A stretch of DNA of 63,605 nt, the filler included, from Octopus bimaculoides (Eukaryota), in assembly GCF_001194135.2 (NCBI RefSeq). It is 4 parts of 4 records of this genome, joined end to end, with 100 filler letters (N's around TTAATTAATTAA, not from the genome) between each part and the next. Parts side by side here need not be neighbours in the genome. Positions count along the whole stretch, not along the records: positions 1 to 15,557 come from NC_068984.1; 3 more parts are not named here. One strand, written 5' to 3'. A program made the position numbers and the translations under genes. The number at the start of each line of letters is the position of its first letter. Positions within the stretch are counted from its first letter, which is position 1. Below the pieces are notes generated by a model. That model searched no databases. It had not been told where the DNA came from and worked only from the letters and a program-made list of their open reading frames with translations. Positions 1 through 15,557 of this stretch are shown here, one piece after another.

Positions 1-1306
1 AAAAACCACCCACAAGATGTGGTACAAACACACACAAAGAAAATTCAAAGAAATGAAATGTACACTTGTGAAATACATGCATGCAATGTATAAATGAAAT
101 GACAACCGTGATGACAACTGTCCAGGAAACTGGAATCACGCGATGTAAAAGTCTTGAGTGTTTGTTTTCCTTGAAAGGAAAGAAAATGTATGAGTGCACA
201 AGTGTGTGTGTGAGAGAAAAAACACAGAACAAGTGAAAGTGTCTGTAGTATAGACTGCGAAAAATCCCAAAACACCGAGATAGAGTACATTGATGAAGAC
301 GTCGGCGCAGAAACTGCTATAGCTGTGTTCTGTATGTGTGGTGGTAACGATGTTGACAGTGGTAGTGATTCAGTTGAAACTTGGCGACGTCGCGGGGAAA
401 GCTTGTAATTGATGGTAGTAATTGTTGTCGTCACGGTGGTAATCTTGGTTGGCGCACGACGCTGGTGGCGAAAAGGCTGTTTGGTGATGAGTATTTGAAG
501 AGGTATGCTTTTACAGAACGATCGACAGACAAATCTCTGTACGACCATTAGCGAAAACCTCGAAGAAAAATTTTCTTAACCCAAGATGAAAGNNNNNNNN
601 NNTAGGTGGTAAACATATAAACACATCTTTACTGTCCATGTTCATGGTCGGCCGACCGTAAAAGAGCTAGCTGTCTAGTGTAGAGAGACAGCTTAAACAC
701 ACGTCCATGCTCAATCGCTGGCCAGCATGAAAGAGAATGAATTGAGCGGGAAACGCTTGCTTGTTTAATTCTACACATGCGCAGGCGTTACTACAAGACT
801 ATTGATTATTGTAGAGAGGTTCAACTTTCGATACTCCTAATTTAACAGCATTTCCGTAGTTACTGATAGGCACATGTTCATTCCTTTACTTATATTTCCC
901 TATCCAAGATGATTTCTTTTCAGGAGTTTGCATAGCTTCTCTCTCTCTCTCTCTCTTTCCATCACCCAGTCTTTTCCCTGTTTCTCTCTTTTTCTCTCTA
1001 TTACTTATTTCTAAATATGTAGACACTCTCTCTCTCCCTCTTCTCTTTCTCTCTTCCTCTCCCTGTTTCTTCTCTCTAAAGATATAGACACTCCTTCTCT
1101 CTTTCTCTATCTCTTTACTTTACTCCATCACACCATCTTCCTTCTCTCAGACCCTCAATCTCTCTTTTCCTCTTTTCTCTCGCACAGAAGCCAGACAGCT
1201 GCTCTGGCAATGATCACGCTCGGACGGTGCTGTTAGCACTCCACTGGCACGGGTGCTAGTCATCGAAATATAGTGTATATATATATGTATACATACATAC
1301 ATACAT

Positions 1307-1387
<81 letters not shown>

Positions 1388-2035
1388 NNNNNNNNNNNNN
1401 NNNNNNNNNNNNNNNNNNNNNNNNNNNNNNNNNNNNNNNNNNNNNNNNNNNNNNNNNNNNNNNNNNNNNNNNNNNNNNNNNNNNNNNNNNNNNNNNNNNN
1501 NNNNNNNNNNNNNNNNNNNNNNNNNNNNNNNNNNNNNNNNNNNNNNNNNNNNNNNNNNNNNNNNNNNNNNNNNNNNNNNNNNNNNNNNNNNNNNNNNNNN
1601 NNNNNNNNNNNNNNNNNNNNNNNNNNNNNNNNNNNNNNNNNNNNNNNNNNNNNNNNNNNNNNNNNNNNNNNNNNNNNNNNNNNNNNNNNNNNNNNNNNNN
1701 NNNNNNNNNNNNNNNNNNNNNNNNNNNNNNNNNNNNNNNNNNNNNNNNNNNNNNNNNNNNNNNNNNNNNNNNNNNNNNNNNNNNNNNNNNNNNNNNNNNN
1801 NNNNNNNNNNNNNNNNNNNNNNNNNNNNNNNNNNNNNNNNNNNNNNNNNNNNNNNNNNNNNNNNNNNNNNNNNNNNNNNNNNNNNNNNNNNNNNNNNNNN
1901 NNNNNNNNNNNNNNNNNNNNNNNNNNNNNNNNNNNNNNNNNNNNNNNNNNNNNNNNNNNNNNNNNNNNNNNNNNNNNNNNNNNNNNNNNNNNNNNNNNNN
2001 NNNNNNNNNNNNNNNNNNNNNNNNNNNNATATATA

Positions 2036-2301
2036 TGTTGTGTGATGGAGGAAAAAGACAACAGAAAAAGAAGCAAAAGGAAGAAAGAAATACAGAGATC
2101 GGATCTTACCTGTTGACCGAGGCGGGATGAGCGATCACTGTCATGAAAAAACATGTCCTTCCACACTAGCTGTCTCTCATCGAACTGCCCCACGTGCTTT
2201 CTGCCTGCGCATGCCCCCATGGCTCTACCACCGGTCCCTGCAGTCTTCACTTTTGTTTACCTCATCAGCAATCCTCTTCATCAACATAACAAACACCCCC
2301 A
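2036..2301 (-). repeat. 3' LTR of the Gypsy element
   Basis: Ends ...CCATCACACAACA on the minus strand. 2038-2127 recurs at 4778-4859 and about 2139-2301 recurs at about 5198-5384. Confidence 0.75.
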
Positions 2302-2403
2302 CCCCACTGTTCTACAGGGGCCTGAGTTCCTGTTATGCTGCTGCTGGCTTCATCATCTTGCCTACTGCTGCTGTCTTCATCTTCTTGCCTACTGTTATTG
2401 TCT

Positions 2404-4157
2404 TCATCTTCTTGCCCACTGCTGTTGATTCCATCCTCTGAGGCATTGACAATCTTCCGCACGTCCAAAACATGGCGTGGCATACCATCGACAGAGATGT
2501 TCTTCGAATTGATGGAGGTTATTGTTCCCTTTCCCCATCGTGATGTACACCTGCATGAAGGCATGCTCTTCCTCTCCCCTGTGTCGCATTGATGCAGTAC
2601 ATGGATGCCTCCACTCATATCTGAATATTGCTCTGTGTGTCACCAACTCCTCAGCCTGTCCTGACCTGGACGACATATTGTACCAAAATACGGCCACAAT
2701 TGGTGAAATGTGGCCCCTCTCTGCCATGGTCTTTATGGTACGATGATGCCTTTCCACCACCCCATTTCCACTTGGCCGCCCTGAAGAAGCAGCTGACCTC
2801 CCACCCATCAAGCATTTCTTTCAGCACCTCCGAGCGAAATGCAGTGCCATTATCCAGAAGCAGCTCATCCATGGGGCCTCGTTCCAGGAATGTCTCATTT
2901 AGTACTCTCACAATTTCTTCTGTGGTCCCTGTCTTCATCTTCTTCCATATGGCCAGCCACCCCGGTTCGCAGTCAACCATTGAGAGGTATGTCTCCTGCC
3001 GGTAGTGTGTTATGTCCACTGCCAGTCATTTCCAGTTGTGGTCCACTGGAATACTTCCCACCTCATGTACGCCCGGAGCAGGGTCGATGGACTGGCACCT
3101 GTAACAGCTGCTAACCACTCTCTGCATGCTCTGTCTTGTTCCATCGGAGTCGACTTTCCTGGCTAGGAACAACGTCCTGTCCACCCTCATGTGATGCATG
3201 GTATGCAATCTCCTCAACTCCGAGTCACTCAGATGGCATACTGCAGCCACAGCCGGCTCCGCATCCTCTGGCACCTGCAACCAGGTTCGCTTTACCCTGG
3301 TCAGACATCTGCTCTGTTCTTCTCAGAAAGCACAAAGATCACACTCAGTTTCAGGTCGAACTCAACGGTTAGTTCACGCAGTATCCCCAATTGACGCTTT
3401 ACCAACATCTCTGTGGCCCCTTTGGTTTGCACCCTCTGCTCATTGGTGATGACTGCCGTCACCCAACCAAGTACAGTGGCCAAATCAGTCCTAATTTCTA
3501 TGGTGCGCAGGCCCCACTTCAAGGCTAGGTTCACTCCCTTCAACGCGGCATCCAGCTCACACCATACGATCCCGCTCTTTGATTTGGGAACATACCAACT
3601 GCCCCTCTCTGGATCCTCTGCTCTCACTCTGACCAAGACTTNNNNNNNNNNAAGGCTAGGTTCACTCCCTTCAACGCGGCATCCAGCTCACACCATACGA
3701 TCCCGCTCTTTGATTTGGGAACATACCAACTGCCCCTCTCTGGATCCTCTGCTCTCACTCTGACCAAGACTTCCTGCATCATGTCGGTTGTCTTCTCCCC
3801 CACTTTATCGTTCCACTTCACTCCTTCTGTTCATCTCTTGATGAAGCTACATGCTGTCCGGAGCCATCCTGCAATAGGGTAGTGTCCCACCAGATTCCCA
3901 CACACCAAGAACAGTTCCTGTCTACTCATGCTGGTTCCCAGTTCGGGGATCTTGTTCCCTCACTGGAACACCAACATGCCAGCCTTGTCTCTCCATAGCT
4001 TGAGGCCCAGTGCAGCACCTCCCCCCATCACCTCTGGTGGCTTGGCGATCAGTCCAAAACTCTTCAGGTGGCCTATGACCTCCGTTGCTAGCATTACGGT
4101 TTCATCCAGCAGGATGTCATCGATATACGAATTGGTGGCCCTTTTTACTCTGTCCAC
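2404..4157 (-). pseudogene. pol: Gypsy pol remnant (RT C-terminus, RNase H, integrase), frameshifted
   Basis: RT motif SYIDDILL (3960-4157). RNase H-like CELDAALKGVNLALKWG...IRTDLATVLGWV (3301-3636). Integrase zinc finger H..HH..DRTLFLARK..C..CQSIDP (3026-3280). Integrase core DITHY/MVDC/LLDNGTAFRS (2651-3019) and GNGVVERHHRTIK (2404-2811). 3652-3770 duplicates 3523-3641 across a 10-N gap. Confidence 0.9.
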
Positions 4158-4174
4158 CTTAAGATAGTGTCCAC

Positions 4175-4777
4175 CTTAAGATAGTGTCCACTTTATCGGT
4201 TGGCTATGAACATATTGATTTGAAGGAATGCAAAGCATGCAACATCATTGCGTGTAACTTGTTGAAGATATCCACCGATTGTGTTTCAGAGTTTGCGGTT
4301 ACTTTAGTGTTGGCAGTTAGTAGACGCATTGAAGAAGGTATTGCCGCTGTTTGAAATGACAACTGGGGCCTCTGGAAACCAATGTGGATTTTGGGATCTA
4401 GTTTTGCAAACTGTACCATAGGAATTCTTGGTATAGGCAGAATTGGATATGGTGTGGCTTGGCATATGAAAGCTTTTTGTATTTCTCGTTTAGTCTGCCA
4501 TGATATCAAAGAGTCATCATTTGCCCAAGAACTTGGAGCAGAATTTGTTGATCTGGAAACCTTACTGAAAGATTTGGATGTCATCTGTATTTGCTGTAAC
4601 CTGACACATCACCAGCAACGTATCATCTCTTCAGCAAGGAGAACTTCAAGAAGATGAAGAATAGAGCAATTCTTATCAATACTAGTTGTGGTGGTGTCAT
4701 CAATCATGCACTAAAAAGTCATGAAATTGGTGCTGCCAGACTTGATGTCACTGAACCTGAACCACTGCCGAAATTGC
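4175..4777 (+). pseudogene. GRHPR: Intronless glyoxylate reductase/hydroxypyruvate reductase-like (D-2-hydroxyacid dehydrogenase family) processed pseudogene fragment
   Basis: Translates LKIVSTLSVGYEHIDL...DCVSEFAVTLVLAVSRRIEEG..*..WGLWKPMWILG...TIGILGIGRIG (Rossmann GxGxxG)...LDVICICCNLT, then after a frameshift PATYHLFSKENFKKMKNRAILINTSCGGVINH..ALKSHEIGAARLDVTEPEPLP. In-frame TGA at 4352-4354, frameshift near 4610, no introns. Confidence 0.88.
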
Positions 4778-5384
4778 TTGTATGATGGGGGGAAAAGACA
4801 ACAGAAAAAGAAGCAAAAGGGAGAAAGAAATACAGAGACCTCACCTGTTGACCGAGACGGTGATGACTGCCGTCACCCAACCAAGTACAGTGGCCAAATC
4901 AGTCCTAATTTCTATGGTGCGCAGGCCCCACTTCAAGGCTAGGTTCACTCCCTTCAACGCGGCATCCAGCTCACACCATACGATCCTGCTCTTTGATTTG
5001 GGAACATACCAACTGCCCCTCTCTGGATCCTCTGCTCTCACTCTGACCAAGACTTCCTGCATCATGTCGGTTGTCTTCTCCCCCACTTTATCGTTCCACT
5101 TCACTCCTTCTGTTCATCTCTTGATGAAGCTACATGCTGTCCGGAGCCATCCTGCAATAGGACTACCCCACGTGCTTTCTGCCCATGCATGCCCCTGTCA
5201 AGAAAAAACATGTCCTTCCACAATAGCTGTCTCTCATCGAACTACCCCACGTGCTTTCTGCCCATGCATGCCCCTGTGACTCTACTGCCATCCCCTGCAG
5301 TCTTTGCTTCCGTTTACCTCATCTGCAATCCTCTCCACCAATACAGCATAGCTCATCACAGCCCATAACACTACAAACACCACA
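4778..5384 (-). repeat. 5' LTR of the Gypsy element, interrupted by a second copy of the RNase H region (4860-5160)
   Basis: LTR halves match the left LTR. 4860-5160 repeats 3447-3878 minus the gap-associated duplication. About 37 bp duplicated at 5162-5198 and 5241-5277. Confidence 0.75.
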
Positions 5385-5889
5385 ATATATGTATATGTAG
5401 ACACACATTCTCTCTCAGCCCCTCAATCTCCCCAAATATTGTGTACATATATATATATATATATAGACACACTCTTTCTCTCTCCAACACACAAGCTTTC
5501 TTCCCCCCAGCCCCTCAATCGCTGTTATAGACACACACTTCCTCTCTCTTTCTCTCACTTTCTCTCTCTCTTTTTTTCTTCTCATTTCTCTTAAACAGTT
5601 TTTCTTCTCTCAACCTTTCAACCTCTATTATAAGCACATATTCCCTCTCTCTTTCTCTCTGTCTCTTCACTTCTCTCCGTCATGCTGTCTTTCTTCTCTC
5701 AACCTCTCAATCTTCCTAAATATATAGACATATACACACATACACACTTTCTCTCTCTCTCTTTGTTCCTCTCTTCTCTCAGCCTTTCAATCTCTCTAAA
5801 TATATAGACACACTCTCTTTCTCACACACTTTCTCTATTTCTTCACCACCCTCCATCACACCGTTATATAATAAATAAATAATCCATAA

Positions 5890-8800
5890 AAATGTCTAGA
5901 AACTGGAGGAGGATGGAATTGGTATTGTATTTGAGAGCTTGGCAGTGTGCTGAAGGAGATAACCCAAACAATATCATCACAGCTGCACTGAAGAGTAATG
6001 GCTACTCAAGAACTTTAGCACAGATAGAGCAAAAGAAGCAGGAGTTTATACGCTCCTACGCTCTCATACGATCCTACATCAGCACTCTTGATACTATCTT
6101 TGATAATGAGCACAGCAAAAATGACAGGGATGGAGGCACAGATGTAGATGAAAGATGTCCCCCCCCCCACTTGGTAGACACTCAAGGAAACAAAGAAGAA
6201 GGTTTAAGCGAGAAACCTGCCAGAAAAATAAACCCAAGTGCAAGTGCACCTACCACCATCAGAGTGAAAAATCATGGAGGTGACAGAGCCAAGAAAAAAC
6301 AACTGAAAGGAGCAAAAACAAAAGATGAAACAACCAAAGAAAGAAGCAAATCTAACTGCCCATACAACAAAAAGAATAAAAAGAGACAGCACACACGAAT
6401 GTGCAAATTTTACTTCAAAGGTGCCTGCTAGCATGGATAGGGAGGTGCAAGCTGCTGTTTTTCACATCAAAGACCCTACCACACCAACATGAAACAGGGT
6501 GGAAACCACCTGCTAAAAGGAAAGGGCCACGCACTACCTGCCCCAAAACGGAAATATGCAGATGTAGTGCGTGCTACAAACCAGTCCTATCAATATGTTG
6601 TTGAAAGGACAGCTACTGAATAACACTATTTTGTGCATGGCACAAAAGATTGTACAGCAACTGACCTGGCTATATCAATCTCACAGATGGGACTATCCCC
6701 AATATAGAAGACCACCACAGTAAATGGACCCAAGGTGGACATCACTGGCAACCACACAGACGACACATCAGTGCTCTTACTGAACATCAGAGGACTGTTA
6801 ACACTTAGTAACAGGACAAAAATTCTTTTCCTGAGAGACCTTGTTCCATGCAATCAAGCCTTACGGAAACACACCTGAAACCAGATATAGCAAATGTAGA
6901 AATACACATACCACAGTATATTGTATTACGGACCAACAGGTCCTTTTGTCACACTCAAATTCAGTATGTGACACACTAATTGTACATACAAGACAACTCA
7001 ATGTACTACATATCACCTTCCAGATACTCCAAAGCATGCAGACAAGTTTGAAGACTGCCTTACAAAAATAGAAGTTCTAGTTACATTACAACAACACATA
7101 AGTGTACTTTTTATGGGAGACTTCAATCTGCCCAATATTGGATGGCCTGAGGGCCTTTCTCTCCCAGGAAAGGCATGATGCAAACAAGGACAGGTGAAGT
7201 CCCTTCTGAACCTCAGGAACACCTTGTACATGGAACAAATAGTACTCCAACCAACCAGGGTAGGTAACATACTGGATCTCTGCTTCACAAATCATATGGA
7301 TCTCATCCATAATGTGAAAGTGACACCAACGCTACTATTGGATCACATCATGGTAGAGCTGACCATGTACAGACCAAAAAAAAACATGGACATGAAGCCT
7401 ACAAAATACTCTCAAAATCTTTGCAGCTTGAACTTCCATAAGGCAAACTGGAAACAAATTGAGAAAGATGTCCTCAAACAAAACTGGCCTAAATGTCTCT
7501 CTTCACCAGACATTGACATGAAACTTCAACAATTCATGTCTGGAATACAAGCCATATGCTACAAATGTGTTCCAGAGAGAAAGGCCACTGTACACAAGAA
7601 CAAAATTCCCAGGGAGAGGAAAATTCTTATGAGAGGGTGTGAAAAAATTTCAAATCACCTAAACAAACAAATTGAAAGCAGTGAAAAGTCCCACATGAAA
7701 ATGCAACTGCTGGAGATTGAAAAAAATCTGCAACTCTCCCTTGAAAAAGAAAGAGCAGACAAAAAAAGCCTGGGCTATAGACAATATAAAACTAACCTCA
7801 GAGCCTTCTACAAGTTTTCCAAAGAAACAGCCTCAGTGCACTGCAGGGTAGGGCCACTCCTCGAAAAAGATGGTTCACTCACAGGAAACCCAATGAGTGT
7901 AAGTGAAATACTAAATGAGTAATTCAAAAGTGTTTTCACTCCACCCCTAGGACACTTGCAAGTCAGCAATCCAGCTGACTTTTTTTACCACTGCAGATAT
8001 AAAAACAGAGGCAGTGATGATTGATTACATCAATATAATAGGACGAAATAAGGGCTATAGATGAAATGAGCCCAAACTCAGCTACTGGCCCTGATGGATT
8101 CCCAGCAACCCTTCTAAAAACATGTGAGTGCTAGCAAGACCACTGCAGTCCCTCTTTCAGAGATCCCTTGCAACTGGCAAACTTCCAAGTTGAAGGAGGG
8201 TAAAATATTGCCCTATTTATAAAGAAGGTAGCAAAGCAGAGGCCAAAAGCTGCAGACCCATTTCCCTGACCTCGTACATCAGCAAAGTCATGGAACGAAT
8301 AGTCAGAAGAAAACTAATCACCTTCCTTAAGGAAAATGACTTGCTGACTGACACCCAACATGGTTCCCAACCAGGAAAAAGTTGCCTGACTCGCCTCTTA
8401 CAACACTATATCTCGACTTCGCAAAGACCTTCGATAAAGTCGATCATGGAATGATATGTCACAAACTGCCTGATCTCGACATAGTCGGGAAATTGGGAGA
8501 ATGGCTGCATGACTTTCTGAAAGATAGAAGTCAGGTGGTAGTAGCCAATGGGGCTACCTCCAACGACACGCAAATAGTGAGCGATGTTCCGCAAGGCACT
8601 GTTTTGGGACCACTATTGTTCATAATGGCCCTCTCAGACATGCCCTCAGCCACACAGAGAGCCACGATCACAAATTATGTAGATGATACAAAAGTCTCAC
8701 AGGTGATACAGAACCCTGAAGACACTATGCACCTGCAATGTGAGCTAGATTAAATATACAAGTGGGCTGAAAAGAATAGCATGCAGTTCAATGCTGAAAC

Positions 8801-9660
8801 GTTTCAAGCCTTGTGCTATCAGCATGTAAAACTAAATGCAATACCAATTAAATACACTGGACATGGAGGGATTGCAATCCCAGAGACACAGTCTGTGTGA
8901 GACCGGGGCATTTACATGAGTAATGATGCATCCTTCCATGTACATGTTGCTAAGTTGGCAATGAAATGCAGGCAACTGACCAGATGGATTCTTAGACCTT
9001 TTAGAACAAGAGATCAGGAAACCATGATGGTCCTCTGGAGGACACTTGTCCTAAGCCACTTTAACTATTGCTCCCAGCTATGGTTACCAACCAGCATCAA
9101 ATTAATTGCAGAACTTGAGGCAATCCAACAAAGCTACATGAAGAAGATAGCCTCTATGAAGCATATAAGCTCCTGGGAAAGACCCAAGAGATTAAGTCTC
9201 TGTTCCTTAGAGTGTAGGTGAGAAAGATATGCCATAATATACATCTGGAAGATGCTGGAGGGACTTGTCCCAAACTTAGACATCAAGAATTACACTAATA
9301 CTAGAACAAGGCACCACTTCATAGTGCCAAGGACTCCAAATTTGCCATCAAGATATAGGACAGGATACTACAAGAGCCTGGGCTTTACAGCTCTTCAATA
9401 TCCTCCCGAAGGACCTGAGAGACCTGCATGGGGTGGATGTAGGTGTTTTCAAAACAAAACTGGACTTCTTATTGTCAAGTGTCCCAGATGAATCAACTTC
9501 ACAGCAGGAAGTGCAGATGAGGGCAGCAGTTTCAAACTCCCTCATGCACCAAATGTCAATTTCTAAAAAGAATTAGTGAAGTAAAATTATGTAGCAACAC
9601 CAAATGGCGGTGCCCCAGCATGGTCACAGCTTATGAGCTGAAACTAGATCTAATCAAATC
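5890..9660 (+). mobile_element. CR1-like LINE, near full length, decayed (ORF1, APE endonuclease, RT)
   Basis: EN motifs LLNIRG, TETHL, MGDFNLPNI, GNILDLCFTN, LDH. RT motifs SATGPDGFP, RPISLTS, YLDFAKTFDKVDH, VPQGTVLGPLLF, YVDDTKV. CR1-type C-terminus LSHFNYCSQLW...SLECR*ERYAIIYIWKMLEGLVPN. Multiple stops and frameshifts. Confidence 0.9.
5892..6600 (+). pseudogene. LINE ORF1 remnant with CCCH-type zinc-finger region
   Basis: 179-aa ORF ending RMCKFYFKGAC*, reading on as HG*GGASCCFSH. Lys-rich linker. Directly upstream of the endonuclease. Confidence 0.6.
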
Positions 9661-9669
9661 ATATATATA

Positions 9670-10873
9670 TCTACTACATATGTGGAAAATCAGTGTGTGT
9701 TTGTTTGTGACATTGTTAGCTAACTACTCCTACATCGTTTTGCTGATTTTGATGAAACTTGACACGTGAGTAGAACTCATGTGTGGAAACTTCGTGACAT
9801 ACATAAATTGTTGAAAAAATCGATAATACGGCCCCTGGAAGGAACATTTATATCTACCTCATATAACCTATCTTTTTTAAACACCCAAGGGGAATAACCC
9901 ATAGCATCTGTACAATAATTTTTGCTAAACGCTCAAGGGAAATAACCCATTTTAATTGTTTATGTTCGATTGCTTCGAATATTGATTTTTTTGTGTGTCC
10001 TATTTCTAATTTTTGCAGACAATATCACTTTTATACTTTATTTGACACGTGAGTAGAACTCCTGTATTGAAACCTTGTGACATACTTAGATTGTTGAAAA
10101 AATCGATAACAGGGCCCTTCCAGTGGATCCTTCTATCTACTAAATATTACTAATATTTTATTTAAACAACCCAAGGGAAATAAGCTATACCACCTGCAGA
10201 TTTTAGCAAAGCAATCAACATTTGATTCTCACGATCAGCCAACCTAATTCTGCATTTCACTACTCACAGTTTTGAACTGCTAAACATTATTATTGCAATT
10301 CCTTAATTTGAATCTTAGACCTTAAATTTCATACATTCATACATTTCTATACATACCTGCATTTTAGAATGCCCATTACTCCGATAATTCTGCATTTTTA
10401 CAGTTACACTTTCTCCATGGCAGTAAAGTTTTTATTCCACAATGTATCTGTAGTGGCTTCATGCAGGTATAGCGTGGATTCGATCCTTGAATGCCAAATT
10501 TCAATTAACACTTCGACAGCGCTTTTCTCACTGTAAAACAATAGTTTTACTGTGAATGACAGCAGTTATACATTTCCCAGATGCCTTCGCTAAGCAGAAC
10601 AAAATCTTTGCCTCTCACCAACCTCCGCCTACCTCTCTCACCAACCTCCGCCAACCTCTCTCACCAACCTCTGACAATCTTTCTCGCCAACCTCCGAAAA
10701 CCTCTCTCGCCAACCTCCAACAATCTCTCCCTCCTCCAGCTGTTAGTTTTTTGTACTTTTTCACCACGGAAAATACACCTTTTGTGGTAATTATAACAAA
10801 ATTGCTTTCTTATATCAGAGTAAAAAGGCGTTTCATATCATTACCCCCGCGAATTACCAGGTACACCAGCTAG
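9670..10873 (+). mobile_element. Non-autonomous Helitron-like element
   Basis: 5' A|TCTACTACATA followed by GT-rich TGTGTGTTTGTTTG and CTGATTTTGATGAAACTTG. 3' GC-rich subterminal segment CCCCGCGAATTACCAGGTA then CTAG (10870-10873). Internal direct repeat about 9760-9900 / 10040-10190 and a CCTCTCTCRCCAACCT minisatellite at about 10610-10730. Confidence 0.6.
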
Positions 10874-12099: not shown

Positions 12100-13298
12100 G
12101 GCATAGGAGTGGCTGTGTGGTAAGTAGCTTGCTTACGAACCACATGGTTCCGAGTTCAATCCCACTGCATGGCACTTTGGGCAAGTGTCGGATCTTTTTG
12201 GTTTGACGGGCAACACTTGCTTTCTTAATGAAACACTTTCAAACTTGGGATACTGGTAGAATGTGTCATATAAAACATCTTTTTCTCTTAGCCTTCTTAA
12301 CAAATTTAGTTCTTAATAAGTTATTTCATGTTAAAGTTGTCGTATTTGTGTAATTTCAACCAATCACTGACGTCTATTGAGCTGAAAACAATTACTGCCG
12401 TGGAATGTAAACAACGGTGTCATGGGATCTTTTCCCTTGAATAAAATTAGTGCCGTTGTTTGTCAACAACAACTATCGGCGGTAGTTATTTATAACATTG
12501 TTTGTGCGTTTGGGTTAGGGTTTGGGTTTTAGAGTTAGGGTTAGGGTTTTAGGGTAAGAGTTGGGGTTAGGGTTATGGTTATGAGTTATAGGGTTTTAGG
12601 GTTAGGGTTATGAGTGAGGTTATGGCAAAAATAATCATAACCCTAAAGCTAAAACCAGTACAAACGCACGAACAATGTTATAAATAACAGTACCACCGAT
12701 AGTTGTTGTTGACAAACAACGGCACTAATTTTATTCACTAATTTTATTCTAACACCGTTAGAATATGTTGTTTACATTCTATGGCAGTAATTGTTTTCAC
12801 CTCAATAGACGTCAGTGATTGGTTGAAATTACCGAAATACGACAACTTTTTACATGAAATAACTTCGAATACAAAAATTTTTATCTGTTCTATAACACAA
12901 AATATACAAGTATACGAAGTTTGAAAGTGTTTCGGTACCAAAAACACTACATAAAACATAAATGAAAAATGTTGCCCGTCAAACCAAAAAGATCCCAAGT
13001 GTCTTCTACTATAACCTCGGGCCGACCAAAGCTTTGTGAGTGGATTTGGTAGACGGAAACTGAAAGAAGCCCATCGTATATATATGTATGTGTGTGTGTC
13101 TGTGTTTCTCCCCCCCCCCTAACATCGCTTGACAACTGATACTGGTGTGTTTACGTCCCTTAGCAGTTTGGCAAAAGAGAACCGATAGAATAAGTACTAG
13201 GCTTACAAAGAATAAGTCCTGGGGTCGATTTGCTTGACTAAAGGTGGTACTCCAGCATGGCCGCAGTCAAATGACCGAAACATGTAAAAGAGTAAAAG
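12100..13298 (+). mobile_element. tRNA-derived SINE (main family, CORE-like), interrupted by a MITE
   Basis: Head GGAGTGGCTGTGTGGTAAG...GAGTTCAATCCC, CORE-like TTGGGCAAGTG, central (GT)n, tail CCAGCATGGCCGCAGTCAAATGACCGAAAC. Many copies in the window. Confidence 0.85.
12190..12995. mobile_element. MITE with long TIRs, 8-bp TSD and internal telomere-like repeats (Merlin-like termini)
   Basis: Termini GGATCTTTTTGGTTTGACGGGCAAC / GTTGCCCGTCAAACCAAAAAGATCC are perfect inverted repeats. TSD CAAGTGTC at 12182-12189 and 12996-13003. Arms complementary over about 300 bp. Degenerate TTAGGG at about 12511-12625. Confidence 0.9.
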
Positions 13299-13478
13299 TG
13301 TAATAAAAATCAAATAAAACCTTAAAATTAGCTTTAGTAGAAGGGAAAAAAACCTGTATACACAGGGTAAATTAATTAATGGTAAAATAAATTATAAAGA
13401 ACTAACATCATAAAAATACATATACATTTAGTAATACATGCACATTCCAAAAACTCTATATATACATATATACACTAA

Positions 13479-14061: not shown

Positions 14062-15557
14062 TCTTTCTTTATTAGCCATGCAGGTCCAAACTCAGAGGGG
14101 ACAATACAAAGTAGAACTTAACTTTTCGAAGGAAAAAAAAACAAACCAATCAAAAGGTATCGAAAGCGTTTGTGACATGTAAACAGCAAAAAAAAAAAAA
14201 AAAATGCAGCGTAAAAATGTAAAAGAGGTTTATCCATGAAAAGAAAAGCCTACGGAAAAGACCACAGGAACCTCAGGCAGGAAAAGTAACACATGAGAGG
14301 AAAATGCGCTCTCTCTCTCTCTTTTGGGTTTACAGGATCATGCTTAAAGTGGTTTCATCATTCACACATACCATCTTTGCTACATTCACCCACATTTTAT
14401 TGAAACTTTTATGAGACAAACCTTCCCTCTCTATTCTCACTTTCCTTTTCAAGTGGTACTTGAAAAAGTTGATGAGTGATTGGTCAGAGAGGAAAGTGTT
14501 TGTCTCTAAACCTTTTGCTTAAGTCCACCACATACATTCTTTCACCATAACCACCAGTACAATGAAAACTGCCTTGCTTTCCCAGTTAAAGGAAGGTAGT
14601 GAGGCAATGTTCATGATAGACTCGGCTGATAAGCAAATTCATCCTACACATGATAGCAGCCGTTTAACATAAGCCCACAGGTCTGAAATTGTTGGACACT
14701 GCACGAGTGCGTGCAGAATAGTTTCATCGCTCTGACCACATCTCAGGCAAGTCGGTCCGGTGTATCTCGAACTGTGCCTGTAGAGCTTATCCCGAATGGG
14801 CAATGCTTCCCAATAGCACTGCCAGGCCAGGGACCGCTGGTGATTGTCCATAGGTCCCAACCCAAAAGTGGTCCTGAAGAGGTGGGTCAGGTGTTTCCTG
14901 TCGACGCCCAGATTCTCCCCAAGAATGTCATTGCACCTCCCCTCCACTAATCCTCTATAGAACGCCTTCATGGAAATGAAGTCGCGCAACTTTATTCCGG
15001 ATGGCAGAGCTGCTCAAGAGTAAGGTGGCACTTACAGTGCCTTTTGTCTAGCCTCGGTCTCTGTTTGATCTATGACTGCAGTTCGACCAAAGAGACGAGC
15101 TGTGGGAAAGCGCATCTCACGAATGGCGACCACACCTGTTCACCATTGTCTATGAAGCACCAGAGATGTCGCAGTTTCAGTGCATGTCTGTGCATCATCA
15201 ACCACGGCAAGCCCAGCCCTCTGTTTAGTGGGTGTTGACAGTAAATGGATTGCCTAACCAATGGAATGCTTGCCTTCCACAAAAAGCCGAAGAGTATGCA
15301 TTCCAGTTTGGTGATGGTAGGATCAGGACAAGGCATGATGGTCAGACGGTAACAGATGATGGATGCAATGTACGTGTTCGCCACCTCTGCTCAACCTTTT
15401 AGGGATAGCTTCCTCTCAGCCCATTGCTGAGTGAGAGTGGCCACCCTACTCATTATCTCGTCCTAGTTCTTCTCCATTTGGAGGTCCGGTCTGAACCAGA
15501 CCCTGAGCAATTTAACCAGTCCATCGGTCCAGTGTCCCATGATGGAGATGCTGTTGG
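14062..15557 (-). mobile_element. Tx1/L1-clade LINE, 3' fragment
   Basis: KLECILFGFLWKASIPLVRQSIYCQHPLNRGLGLPW and C-terminal zinc knuckle LAWQCYWEALP...CLRCGQSDETILHALVQC. 3' UTR with AATAAA abutting (GATA)n. The 5' side runs into an assembly linker. Confidence 0.8.

What the first reader, a model, noticed from the sequence alone, without database searches (positions are those of the whole stretch)
2036..5384. Host metabolic-gene retrocopy (GRHPR-like) captured inside a Gypsy LTR retrotransposon
Seen: an intronless ~600-bp GRHPR-like segment (4175-4777) sits between the truncated RT and the 5' LTR, antisense to pol, where PBS, gag, protease and the RT N-terminus should be. Two LTRs and a possible ATATA TSD flank the unit. 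Established: LTR-mediated retroposition of host mRNAs by template switching is documented in plants, Drosophila and mouse. Inference: this is a cephalopod case of host-mRNA capture by an LTR element. The antisense orientation and missing PBS suggest the chimera formed in the last integration event, or afterwards, and did not spread.
Basis: partly seen in the sequence, partly recalled or inferred. Interest (0 to 1): 0.8.

Follow-up and report, generated by a model that had tools for sequence, protein, structure and literature searches.

The report
Octopus retrotransposon carrying antisense GRHPR retrocopy
An old, dead LTR retrotransposon in an octopus genome has had its front half replaced by a spliced, backwards copy of part of the host GRHPR gene; this kind of gene capture is known in other animals, but here the gene is joined on exactly at the element's unusual primer-binding site.

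Summary
Window 2036-5384 is one LTR retrotransposon on the minus strand, with two LTRs and the family's 5-bp target duplication (ATATA, weak in an AT repeat). Window 4161-4773 (+) is an intronless copy of Octopus GRHPR, from exon 2 nt 9 to codon 274. The parent gene has three coding exons, and the exon 2/3 junction is spanned exactly. The copy replaces about 1.7 kb: most of the leader, gag, protease and the N-terminal half of RT.

Corrections:
- The N gap at 3642-3651 sits between two perfect 121-bp copies. It is an unmerged contig overlap, and pol is continuous across it.
- The primer-binding site (PBS) is kept (4767-4778). In this family it is a conserved 12-mer complementary to nt 1-12 of tRNA-Phe.
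- The GRHPR junction lies inside that PBS, at an 8-nt microhomology (TGCCGAAA). The pol junction has 3 nt (AAG) plus a 17-nt tandem duplication.
- The 5' LTR holds a much younger 340-nt insert copied from the element's own RNase H region.
- "Gypsy" is supported only by domain order.

GRHPR-specific divergence (5.1%, no codon bias) is about half the LTR-LTR divergence, so capture and integration have the same age. Best reading: LTR-mediated retroposition in which the mRNA mimicked the primer, which would explain the antisense orientation. It is a new member of a known kind.

The parts
2031..2035 (.). Left copy of the putative 5-bp target-site duplication (ATATA)
   Evidence: Identical to 5385-5389. 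Relatives have 5-bp TSDs (ACCAG, GTTAA, ATTTC). Weak evidence: the site is an AT microsatellite and a 641-N gap starts 7 nt to the left.
2036..2300 (-). 3' LTR of the element (LTR1). Its outer end ...CACACAACA matches the family's LTR end
   Evidence: Aligns to LTR2 with 27 mismatches in 245 nt, K2P 0.12, and to the L004 3' LTR end.
2296..2313 (-). Polypurine tract (AGAACAGTGGGGTGGGGG in element sense) abutting the 3' LTR
   Evidence: Read directly from the sequence. L004 has a matching tract upstream of its 3' LTR.
2301..3641 (-). pol remnant: C-terminal part of RNase H, H2C2 zinc finger, rve integrase core and C-terminus. There are at least 3 frameshifts, a stop at 3026-3028, and the RT-RNase H reading frame ends at a stop at 3301-3303
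   Evidence: Pfam rve and Integrase_H2C2 hits. 88-92% nt identity to O. sinensis copies L004-L006. Frame map.
3642..3772 (.). Assembly artefact: 10 N plus a second copy of the 121 bp that precede the gap
   Evidence: 3521-3641 = 3652-3772 at 100%. Relatives and the copy at 4859-5161 read straight through.
3773..4160 (-). pol remnant: RT from just before the YIDD motif, the DUF7047 'tether' and the start of RNase H. In-frame stops at about 3960 and 3831. A 108-nt RNase H deletion relative to relatives removes the DAS catalytic motif
   Evidence: Homology to relatives stops at 4160 (= L004 8031).
4152..4185 (.). Perfect 17-nt tandem duplication (GTCCACCTTAAGATAGT x2) at the pol/GRHPR junction, lying between two GTCCAC hexamers, one from pol and one from GRHPR
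4158..4160 (.). 3-nt microhomology (CTT on the plus strand, AAG in element sense) at the pol/GRHPR junction
   Evidence: pol relatives read ...GGAAAG|GTGGACAG and the parent antisense reads ...CTTCAG|ATTAGGAC. The chance of 3 nt or more is 0.05.
4161..4773 (+). GRHPR retrocopy: exon 2 from nt 9 (CDS nt 214) through exon 3 to CDS nt 822 (codon 274). The exon 2/3 junction is at 4337/4338 with no intron. Disabled by a TGA at 4352-4354, a 5-nt insertion at 4605-4609 and a 15-nt deletion after 4705. No 3' UTR and no poly(A)
4766..4773 (.). 8-nt microhomology (TGCCGAAA on the plus strand, TTTCGGCA in element sense) shared by the GRHPR mRNA and the element's PBS/leader
   Evidence: GCCGAAA occurs once in the parent CDS, exactly here. 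The chance of 8 nt or more at a random junction is 1e-4.
4767..4778 (-). Primer-binding site of the family (AGCAATTTCGGC; family consensus AGCTATTTCGGC), the reverse complement of tRNA-Phe nt 1-12, directly abutting the 5' LTR
   Evidence: The same 12-mer follows the 5' LTR in L005, L006, L007 and L008. tRNA-Phe sequence taken from PMC11706605.
4779..4858 (-). 5' LTR (LTR2), inner (U5-side) part
   Evidence: Aligns to 2036-2120.
4859..5161 (-). Young duplicate of the element's own RNase H region (= 3445-3641 + 3773-3878) inserted in LTR2, in the same orientation
   Evidence: 1 mismatch in 303 nt, a CpG C>T at 4987, against 11% between the LTRs.
5162..5198 (-). 37-nt perfect duplicate of LTR2 5241-5277, part of the same composite insert
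5199..5384 (-). 5' LTR (LTR2), outer (U3-side) part, starting TGTGGTGT in element sense
   Evidence: Aligns to 2142-2300 and to the starts of the L004 LTRs.
5385..5389 (.). Right copy of the putative 5-bp target-site duplication (ATATA)
   Evidence: The flanks on both sides belong to the same CT-rich/TATAGACACAC repeat family (families D3, D4, D6).

Best explanation
This is a dead-on-arrival chimera made in one aberrant round of reverse transcription of a compact (~4.3 kb) gag-PR-RT-RNaseH-IN LTR retrotransposon in an octopus, probably O. bimaculoides.

Shown:
- A spliced GRHPR mRNA fragment (exon 2 nt 9 to codon 274) replaces the rest of the leader, gag, PR and the RT N-terminal half.
- It is antisense to the element.
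- Its 3'-side end is joined inside the element's 12-nt PBS through 8 shared bases.
- Its 5'-side end is joined to RT through 3 shared bases.
- Both LTRs, the PBS and the PPT are present.
- The GRHPR part has evolved neutrally for about as long as the two LTRs have been diverging.

Inferred mechanism:
- The family's PBS pairs with the first 12 nt of tRNA-Phe (GCCGAAAUAGCU). The GRHPR mRNA contains GCCGAAA exactly once, at the junction.
- Either a cleaved GRHPR mRNA paired with the PBS and primed minus-strand synthesis in place of the tRNA fragment, or the 3' end of plus-strand strong-stop DNA (...AGCTATTTCGGC) annealed to the mRNA instead of to the minus-strand PBS copy.
- In both cases plus-strand synthesis then copied the mRNA towards its 5' end. 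That makes antisense, intron-free GRHPR DNA attached to U5-PBS.
- This strand then paired at AAG with the minus strand in RT, and the product was completed and integrated by integrase.

Later events:
- Point mutations and indels accumulated.
- Much more recently, a local microhomology-mediated copy of 303 nt of the RNase H region plus 37 nt of LTR was inserted into the 5' LTR.
For: - Parent and splicing.
- Replacement rather than insertion: relatives L004/L005 carry about 1.67 kb of leader-gag-PR-RT-N where the window has 0.6 kb of GRHPR.
- Junctions: the 8-nt TTTCGGCA microhomology lies inside the conserved PBS. GCCGAAA is unique in the CDS. Random junctions reach 8 nt or more at 1e-4 and 3 nt or more at 0.05.
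- Age: 31 window-specific substitutions in 604 nt (5.1%), spread 10:9:12 over codon positions. LTR-LTR divergence is 11.0% (K2P 0.12), about 5.5-6% per copy.
- Integration as a unit: complete outer LTR termini, a 5-bp flank repeat as in relatives, and the same repeat family on both flanks.
- Not a LINE-type copy: the fragment has no poly(A) or 3' UTR.
- Not a mis-join with the parent gene: it is 6.6% diverged from the O. bimaculoides parent, so it is a separate genomic sequence.
- Precedent: the structure matches published LTR-mediated retrocopies, where ORF parts are replaced, both LTRs remain and median microsimilarity is 6 bp (PMC5131818).
Against: - This is a single locus in a draft assembly, with a gap 500 bp away and another 7 bp from the left LTR. 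No read-level or second-assembly confirmation was possible.
- The strand-transfer and priming steps are inferred from the end product only. The two sub-models cannot be told apart.
- The octopus tRNA-Phe sequence and the real primer of this family were not determined.
- The TSD is uninformative in an AT repeat.
- The published minus-strand template-switch model predicts sense orientation, so this case needs a different step.
- The pol-side microhomology is short (3 nt).
- The LTR and GRHPR ages are similar, but each rests on about 30 substitutions.
Confidence: 0.6

Rival explanations
1. Post-integration DNA repair. A normal element was integrated. Later a double-strand break or deletion removed about 1.7 kb, and microhomology-mediated end joining sealed it with a free GRHPR cDNA fragment captured as filler, in a random orientation.
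For: - Both junctions have microhomology, and the pol junction has a templated-looking 17-nt duplication.
- The same element shows a separate, clearly post-integration microhomology-mediated insertion in LTR2, so such events happen at this locus.
- Orientation is free under this model.
Against: - One breakpoint would have to fall by chance inside the 12-nt PBS, out of about 1.7 kb (roughly 1%).
- It would also have to use the only GCCGAAA in the mRNA.
- The GRHPR neutral divergence equals the per-copy LTR divergence, so the repair would have to follow integration almost at once.
Confidence: 0.17
2. Earlier capture followed by trans-mobilisation. The chimera formed in a previous cycle and this locus is one copy of a small non-autonomous family.
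For: LTRs, PBS (11/12) and PPT are all present, so mobilisation in trans is structurally possible. Tan et al. describe re-mobilised chimeras.
Against: - The GRHPR divergence is not older than the LTR pair.
- No pseudogene-like GRHPR ORFs other than the parent cluster were returned from 5.8 billion proteins, and no exact ORFs of this locus are on record. That database does not cover unannotated octopus DNA well, so this is weak evidence.
Confidence: 0.1
3. Nested or independent events. A LINE-made GRHPR processed pseudogene already lay here, and LTR element(s) or a solo LTR were inserted into or next to it and then rearranged.
For: The window is rich in non-LTR elements: RVT_1 at 8382-8753 and zf-RVT at 14639-14989.
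Against: - There is no poly(A), no 3' UTR and no GRHPR sequence beyond either LTR.
- Flanks outside both LTRs are the same simple-repeat family.
- Junctions fall at the PBS and inside RT with microhomology, not at LTR termini with a TSD.
Confidence: 0.05
4. Assembly chimera. The GRHPR segment or the LTR2 insert was mis-joined by the assembler or gap closer.
For: - A demonstrable assembly artefact lies at 3642-3772.
- The near-identical RNase H copies (1/303) are the kind of repeat that confuses short-read assembly.
- The 641-N gap is 7 nt from LTR1.
Against: - The GRHPR part carries 31 private substitutions plus indels, so it is not parent-gene or cDNA reads.
- Junction overlaps of 3-8 nt are far shorter than assembly k-mers.
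- Both GRHPR junctions lie inside one gap-free contig.
- The two RNase H copies differ at a CpG site, and both halves of the split copy agree with each other against the LTR2 copy.
Confidence: 0.06

Closest known systems
LTR-mediated retroposition chimeras (Tan et al. 2016, Genome Res, PMC5131818; earlier yeast Ty, maize Bs1, rice, HERV-K/FAM8A1)
   Same: - A partial, intron-free copy of a host mRNA sits inside an LTR retrotransposon.
- It replaces part of the element's ORFs.
- Both LTRs are retained.
- There is microsimilarity at both fusion points.
- It has no poly(A).
   Different: - The copy is antisense to the element. The published minus-strand template-switch model between co-packaged RNAs does not produce that for a spliced sense mRNA.
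- One junction is inside the PBS.
- The host is a cephalopod. No octopus case turned up in the library.
- The copy is old and degenerate, not polymorphic or expressed.
Retroviral and retrotransposon priming variants: Tf1 self-priming, copia/Ty5 use of internal or 5' parts of initiator tRNA-Met (own knowledge)
   Same: - The family's PBS lacks the usual TGG and does not pair with a tRNA 3' end.
- A primer would have to be made by cleaving an RNA at the end of a short (12-bp) duplex, as in Tf1.
- That would let any RNA with a PBS-complementary stretch act as primer.
   Different: - Here the complementarity is to nt 1-12 of tRNA-Phe.
- No complementarity to the element's own LTR was found.
- The priming mode itself is not demonstrated.
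LINE-mediated processed pseudogenes
   Same: Intronless and non-functional from birth, evolving neutrally.
   Different: - No poly(A) tail.
- No own TSD.
- Truncated at the 3' end as well as the 5' end.
- Embedded between parts of one LTR element.
Ty3/Gypsy (Metaviridae) versus BEL/Pao versus retroviruses
   Same: - Full-length relatives have zf-CCHC gag, an aspartyl protease, RVT_1, RNase H, H2C2 and rve in Gypsy/retrovirus order.
- 5-bp TSDs and TG...CA LTRs.
   Different: - No RT_RNaseH/RT_RNaseH_2 hit. Instead there is DUF7047 plus an RVT_3/PF00075-type RNase H.
- The best solved-structure matches are retroviral integrases and RTs at weak E-values.
- No Peptidase_A17, so it is not BEL/Pao.
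- The clade was not determined.

Membership tests
LTR-mediated retrocopy (sensu Tan et al. 2016) | The copy lacks introns that the parent gene has | tested here: met
   The parent has introns of 28.5 kb and 2.2 kb in O. bimaculoides. The exon 2/3 junction is contiguous at 4337/4338. Only one junction is covered.
LTR-mediated retrocopy (sensu Tan et al. 2016) | The copy is flanked on both sides by parts of one LTR retrotransposon whose internal region is replaced, not interrupted | tested here: met
   PBS on one side and mid-RT on the other. About 1.67 kb present in relatives is absent.
LTR-mediated retrocopy (sensu Tan et al. 2016) | Microsimilarity at the fusion points beyond chance | tested here: met
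   8 nt (P about 1e-4) and 3 nt (P about 0.05).
LTR-mediated retrocopy (sensu Tan et al. 2016) | Both LTRs present and the unit integrated with the element's own TSD | tested here: inconclusive
   Both LTRs have complete outer ends. The 5-bp ATATA repeat fits the family rule but lies in an AT microsatellite next to a 641-N gap.
LTR-mediated retrocopy (sensu Tan et al. 2016) | Same transcriptional orientation as the element, implied by minus-strand switching between co-packaged RNAs | tested here: not met
   GRHPR is on the plus strand and pol on the minus strand. The paper does not state orientation as a criterion.
LINE-type processed pseudogene | 3' end of the mRNA with a poly(A) tail and flanking 7-20 bp TSD | tested here: not met
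   The copy ends at CDS nt 822 of 975 and abuts the PBS. No further GRHPR sequence is in the window.
Ty3/Gypsy superfamily | gag, PR, RT, RNase H, IN order with LTRs | tested here: met
   The window shows RT, RH, IN order. Relatives P0186, P0223 and P0299 show zf-CCHC, Asp protease, RVT_1, DUF7047, RNase H, H2C2 and rve.
Ty3/Gypsy superfamily | RT/RNase H grouping with Gypsy clades (phylogeny, or Gypsy-type RT_RNaseH domain) | tested here: inconclusive
   No RT_RNaseH(_2) hit. The RNase H is of RVT_3/PF00075 type with a DUF7047 tether. PDB matches are weak and retroviral. No phylogeny was made.
BEL/Pao | Peptidase_A17 protease and DUF1759-type gag | tested here: not met
   Absent from 8 full-length relatives.
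Functional GRHPR paralogue (retrogene) | Open reading frame and purifying selection | tested here: not met
   In-frame TGA, a 5-nt insertion, a 15-nt deletion, only codons 72-274 present, and private substitutions spread 10:9:12 over codon positions.

The most novel reading that the evidence does not exclude
The capture happened because the GRHPR mRNA mimics the element's primer. This LTR lineage uses a PBS complementary to the first 12 nt of tRNA-Phe, conserved in copies whose pol is only 46-58% identical. An mRNA carrying GCCGAAA was accepted at that PBS, either as primer or as acceptor for plus-strand strong-stop DNA. That produced an antisense, spliced gene copy fused exactly at the PBS. 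If this is general, it is a distinct, sequence-predictable route of host-gene capture, and it makes LTR-driven antisense copies of host genes. It would also point to a priming mode (a 5'-terminal tRNA fragment) that my searches of the library did not find described for animal LTR elements.
Probability: 0.35. Interest if true: 0.65.

Novelty: new member of a known kind. Interest (0 to 1): 0.42.

Why it matters
- It extends LTR-mediated retroposition to cephalopods. That mechanism is documented in yeast, plants, insects and vertebrates.
- It is an unusually readable example. Both junctions, the parent gene, related intact copies and two independent molecular clocks agree.
- The antisense orientation and the junction inside a conserved, non-canonical PBS suggest a testable rule for which mRNAs get captured: those carrying a short match to the primer.
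- They also draw attention to an LTR lineage whose PBS pairs with the 5' end of tRNA-Phe.
- The GRHPR copy itself is a neutral pseudogene with no sign of function. At birth, an LTR-driven transcript of it would have been antisense to the parent mRNA. That is speculation.

Tried and rejected
- **Exact look-up of ten ORFs from the locus, including three that span junctions.** None is in the 15-billion-protein collection. An exact look-up of the neighbouring LINE ORF also failed. So the window could not be placed on a named contig, and no independent assembly of the junctions was found.
- **Other GRHPR pieces in the window.** tblastn and blastn of the whole parent locus found none.
- **Capture through a read-through or spliced chimeric transcript.** I considered this because the copy starts 8 nt from the exon 2 acceptor, and because a 95-nt LTR fragment of the same family lies in intron 1 of the O. 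bimaculoides parent. I rejected it as the main explanation. The junction is not at the exon boundary (pol-derived GTGGAC plus AAG explain it). The orientation is wrong for read-through. The fragment is tiny.
- **BEL/Pao identity, which I suspected at first.** Rejected.
- **Self-priming, with the PBS complementary to the element's own LTR.** No match beyond 6-9 nt.
- **tRNA genes in the fetched loci, to obtain the octopus tRNA-Phe.** None found.
- **Source names for long relatives.** Uninformative.
- **Literature on DUF7047 and on unusual PBS or primer types in LTR retrotransposons (tRNA-Phe, self-priming).** Nothing relevant found.
- **The third homology search.** I ran no further search on junction ORFs, because the first search showed that the database lacks ORFs from this locus.
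Full report
**1. Assembly check first**

The window has N runs at 593-602, 1388-2028 and 3642-3651. The 10-N gap inside the finding is flanked by a perfect 121-bp direct duplication, 3521-3641 = 3652-3772.

Removing the gap and one copy gives a sequence colinear base for base with related elements: window 3641 and 3773 correspond to adjacent bases 8419 and 8418 of L004. It is also colinear with a second copy of the same stretch at 4859-5161, and it keeps one reading frame. The gap is therefore an unmerged contig overlap, and pol is continuous across it.

The parent-gene locus from the O. bimaculoides assembly shows the same style of gaps, with variable lengths and a 10-N minimum. The O. sinensis and O. 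vulgaris loci have none. The window therefore probably comes from the O. bimaculoides assembly. This is an inference.

**2. The element**

*Outer structure*
- LTR1 is 2036-~2300. LTR2 is 4779-5384.
- They align with 27 mismatches in 245 positions (11.0%, K2P 0.12) plus several indels, once a 340-nt insert in LTR2 is set aside.
- In element sense (window minus strand) the LTRs start TGTGG and end ...ACA, as in relatives.
- Relatives have 5-bp target duplications: L004 ACCAG, L007 GTTAA, L008 ATTTC.
- The window has ATATA on both sides (2031-2035, 5385-5389). This fits the rule but is weak evidence inside an AT microsatellite, and only 7 bases are read on the left.
- Both outer flanks belong to the same CT-rich/TATAGACACAC repeat family.

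*Coding remnant on the minus strand, from 4160 downward*
- RT from just before YIDD, a DUF7047 domain, an RVT_3/PF00075-type RNase H, an H2C2 finger and an rve integrase core.
- The RT-RNase H frame has in-frame stops near 3960 and 3831 and ends at a stop at 3301-3303. The integrase part has a stop at 3026-3028 and at least three frame shifts around it.
- RNase H lacks 108 nt, including the DAS motif.
- A polypurine tract lies at 2296-2313.

*Relatives and classification*
- O. sinensis copies L004-L006 are 88-92% identical in pol.
- L004 is a roughly 4.25-kb element. Its gag starts about 25 nt after a truncated 5' LTR, and PR-RT starts near 7110.
- Full-length relatives from other animals have zf-CCHC gag, an aspartyl protease, RVT_1, DUF7047, RNase H, H2C2 and rve.
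- None has Peptidase_A17, so the family is not BEL/Pao.
- None has the Gypsy-type RT_RNaseH domains. The nearest solved structures are retroviral, at weak scores.
- 'Gypsy' is therefore supported by domain order only.

**3. The host segment**

- Translation of 4184-4773 (+) matches D-isomer 2-hydroxyacid dehydrogenase domains. It is 87% identical to Octopus GRHPR: P0001 = BAB33312, deposited as D-lactate dehydrogenase; XP_052828101 in O. bimaculoides.
- The three parent loci have three coding exons. In O. bimaculoides these are L001 3001-3205, 31692-31862 and 34090-34688.
- The window segment aligns to CDS nt 214-822, meaning exon 2 from its 9th base and exon 3 to codon 274. The exon 2/3 junction is contiguous at 4337/4338. 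It was therefore copied from spliced RNA.
- It has an in-frame TGA at 4352-4354 (CGA>TGA), a 5-nt insertion at 4605-4609 and a 15-nt deletion after 4705.
- It has no 3' UTR or poly(A). No other GRHPR piece exists in the window.

**4. The junctions**

*PBS side.* In four relatives whose LTRs do not align with one another, the 12 nt right after the 5' LTR are AGCTATTTCGGC: L005 (one mismatch), L006, L007 (pol 46% identical) and L008 (58%).
- This is the reverse complement of nt 1-12 of tRNA-Phe-GAA, using the human sequence printed in PMC11706605. That the octopus tRNA is the same is my assumption, based on metazoan conservation.
- No TGG-type PBS follows any of these LTRs, and no complementarity to the element's own LTR was found.
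- The window reads, in element sense, ...CATCATACA|AGCAATTTCGGCA|GTGGTTCAGG... The PBS is present at 4767-4778 (11/12). The switch to antisense GRHPR lies within TTTCGGCA, which the PBS/leader and the GRHPR antisense strand share.
- GCCGAAA occurs once in the 975-nt CDS, at exactly this place.
- Random junctions between the replaced part of a relative and the GRHPR antisense strand reach 8 or more shared bases at a frequency of 1e-4.

*pol side.* Relatives read GGAAAG|GTGGACAG and the parent antisense strand reads CTTCAG|ATTAGGAC. The window has CTTAAG|GTGGACAG, a 3-nt overlap (P about 0.05).
- GRHPR has its own GTGGAC 11 nt away. The window carries a perfect 17-nt tandem duplication between the two hexamers at 4152-4185. 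This is consistent with either slippage or repeated template switching.
- The segment starts only 8 nt inside exon 2. I treat this as coincidence, because VD (GTGGAC) is pol sequence in the relatives.

**5. Timing**

- Against the three parent sequences, the segment has 31 private substitutions in 604 aligned positions (5.1%). They are mostly C>T and G>A and are spread 10:9:12 over codon positions. That indicates neutral evolution from the start.
- It shares 13 states with O. bimaculoides and 9 with O. sinensis/O. vulgaris. It therefore arose near the split of those lineages.
- Half of the LTR-LTR divergence is about 5.5-6%. The host fragment has thus been neutral DNA for about as long as the LTRs have been separate copies. 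This argues that the chimera was made at, or very close to, integration.
- By contrast, the RNase H copy in LTR2 (4859-5161) differs from the pol copy at one CpG site in 303 nt, and the adjoining 37-nt LTR duplicate (5162-5198 = 5241-5277) is perfect.
- That composite insert replaced about 15 nt of LTR2, with 0-4 nt overlaps at its three junctions. It is far younger and is a local DNA-level templated insertion, unless reads show it to be an artefact.

**6. Mechanism**

The end product matches LTR-mediated retroposition as described by Tan et al. 2016: a partial intronless copy replacing ORF sequence, both LTRs kept, and microsimilarity at the fusion points with a median of 6 bp.

The published model, in which the minus strand switches between co-packaged RNAs, gives a sense-oriented copy. 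An antisense copy that is nevertheless spliced in the gene's own sense needs a step in which the mRNA is copied as a continuation of the element's plus strand.

The junction inside the PBS suggests how. This is inference.
- (a) The mRNA paired with the PBS through GCCGAAA, was cleaved at the end of the duplex and primed minus-strand synthesis. The family's normal primer must also be cleaved, since it pairs through its 5' end.
- (b) Alternatively, plus-strand strong-stop DNA ending in ...TTTCGGC annealed to the mRNA instead of to the minus-strand PBS copy.

Either way, RT then ran along the mRNA towards its 5' end. The new 3' end paired at AAG with the minus strand in RT. The two strands were completed on each other, deleting gag, PR and the RT N-terminus, and integrase inserted the product.

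I put about 0.6 on capture during reverse transcription with PBS mimicry. The two sub-variants cannot be separated here.

**7. Rivals**

- **Post-integration end joining with a captured cDNA (0.17).** It explains the microhomology and the free orientation. It must, however, place a breakpoint in the 12-nt PBS by chance and act right after integration.
- **Earlier capture and later trans-mobilisation (0.10).** It is structurally possible because LTRs, PBS and PPT are present. The clocks give no extra age, and copy number could not be measured.
- **A pre-existing LINE-type pseudogene with nested insertions (0.05).** It lacks poly(A), further GRHPR sequence and TSD-flanked LTR ends.
- **Assembly chimera (0.06).** It is unlikely for the GRHPR junctions. 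The segment has 31 private substitutions, the overlaps are 3-8 nt and both junctions lie in one gap-free contig. Read-level proof is still missing.

**8. Verdict**

- The PBS is present, and the junction is inside it.
- One exon junction is spanned, not several.
- The Gypsy label is unproven.
- The LTR2 insert and the gap artefact were missed.

This is a new, cephalopod member of a known class of events, an old neutral pseudogene. Its instructive twist is the antisense capture at a non-canonical, conserved PBS.

I did not build a full-length consensus of the element. Comparisons were made piece by piece.

Noticed in passing
window 4767-4778; L005 5363-5374; L006 123-134; L007 4689-4700; L008 4443-4454: The LTR family has a conserved 12-nt PBS (AGCTATTTCGGC) directly after the 5' LTR. 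It is the reverse complement of nt 1-12 of tRNA-Phe-GAA, not of a tRNA 3' end. It is identical in copies with only 46-58% pol identity and unalignable LTRs. This implies priming by a 5'-terminal tRNA fragment or another unusual primer.
   Followed up: partly
window 4859-5198: The 5' LTR is interrupted by a composite insert: 303 nt copied from the element's own RNase H region (1 mismatch) plus a perfect 37-nt copy of nearby LTR sequence. It is at least ten times younger than the LTR pair. It looks like a local microhomology-mediated templated insertion, and it probably caused the contig break at 3642-3651.
   Followed up: yes
L001 27706-27800 (intron 1 of O. bimaculoides GRHPR): A 95-nt fragment of the same LTR family (89% identical to window 5287-5379) lies 3.9 kb upstream of exon 2 of the parent gene, in sense orientation. 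It is absent from the O. sinensis and O. vulgaris loci. It is probably a coincidence, and its relation to the capture is unknown.
   Followed up: partly
L004 6290-6340: The O. sinensis relative has lost the last ~80 nt of its 5' LTR and most of the PBS. The deletion runs between two similar motifs, GCTGATTTCGCC in the LTR and AGCTATTTCGGC at the PBS. This is another rearrangement anchored at the PBS.
   Followed up: partly
window 5892-9300 (+) and 14639-15384 (-): Non-LTR (LINE-like) retrotransposon remnants. RVT_1 lies at 8382-8753 with a YVDD motif, and a zf-RVT domain lies at 14639-14989. Neither has a structural link to the GRHPR copy.
   Followed up: partly
window 12221-12942: A foldback/MITE-like element with nested inverted repeats (up to 98% complementary) around degenerate TTAGGG-like repeats at 12496-12625. 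Related sequence (window ~12100-13300) occurs many times in the introns and flank of the GRHPR locus.
   Followed up: no
window 900-1387 and 5385-5900; 10612-10749: The element sits in a CT-rich/TATAGACACAC minisatellite-like array that continues on both sides. A separate 23-nt tandem repeat (CTCTCACCAACCTCCGCCTACCT, about 5 copies) lies at 10612-10749.
   Followed up: no
window 4161-4168 versus L001 31692-31699: The GRHPR copy begins only 8 nt inside exon 2 of the parent. pol-derived GTGGAC explains the bases at the junction, so I treat this as coincidence. An origin from an RNA whose 5' end lay at the exon boundary is not strictly excluded.
   Followed up: partly
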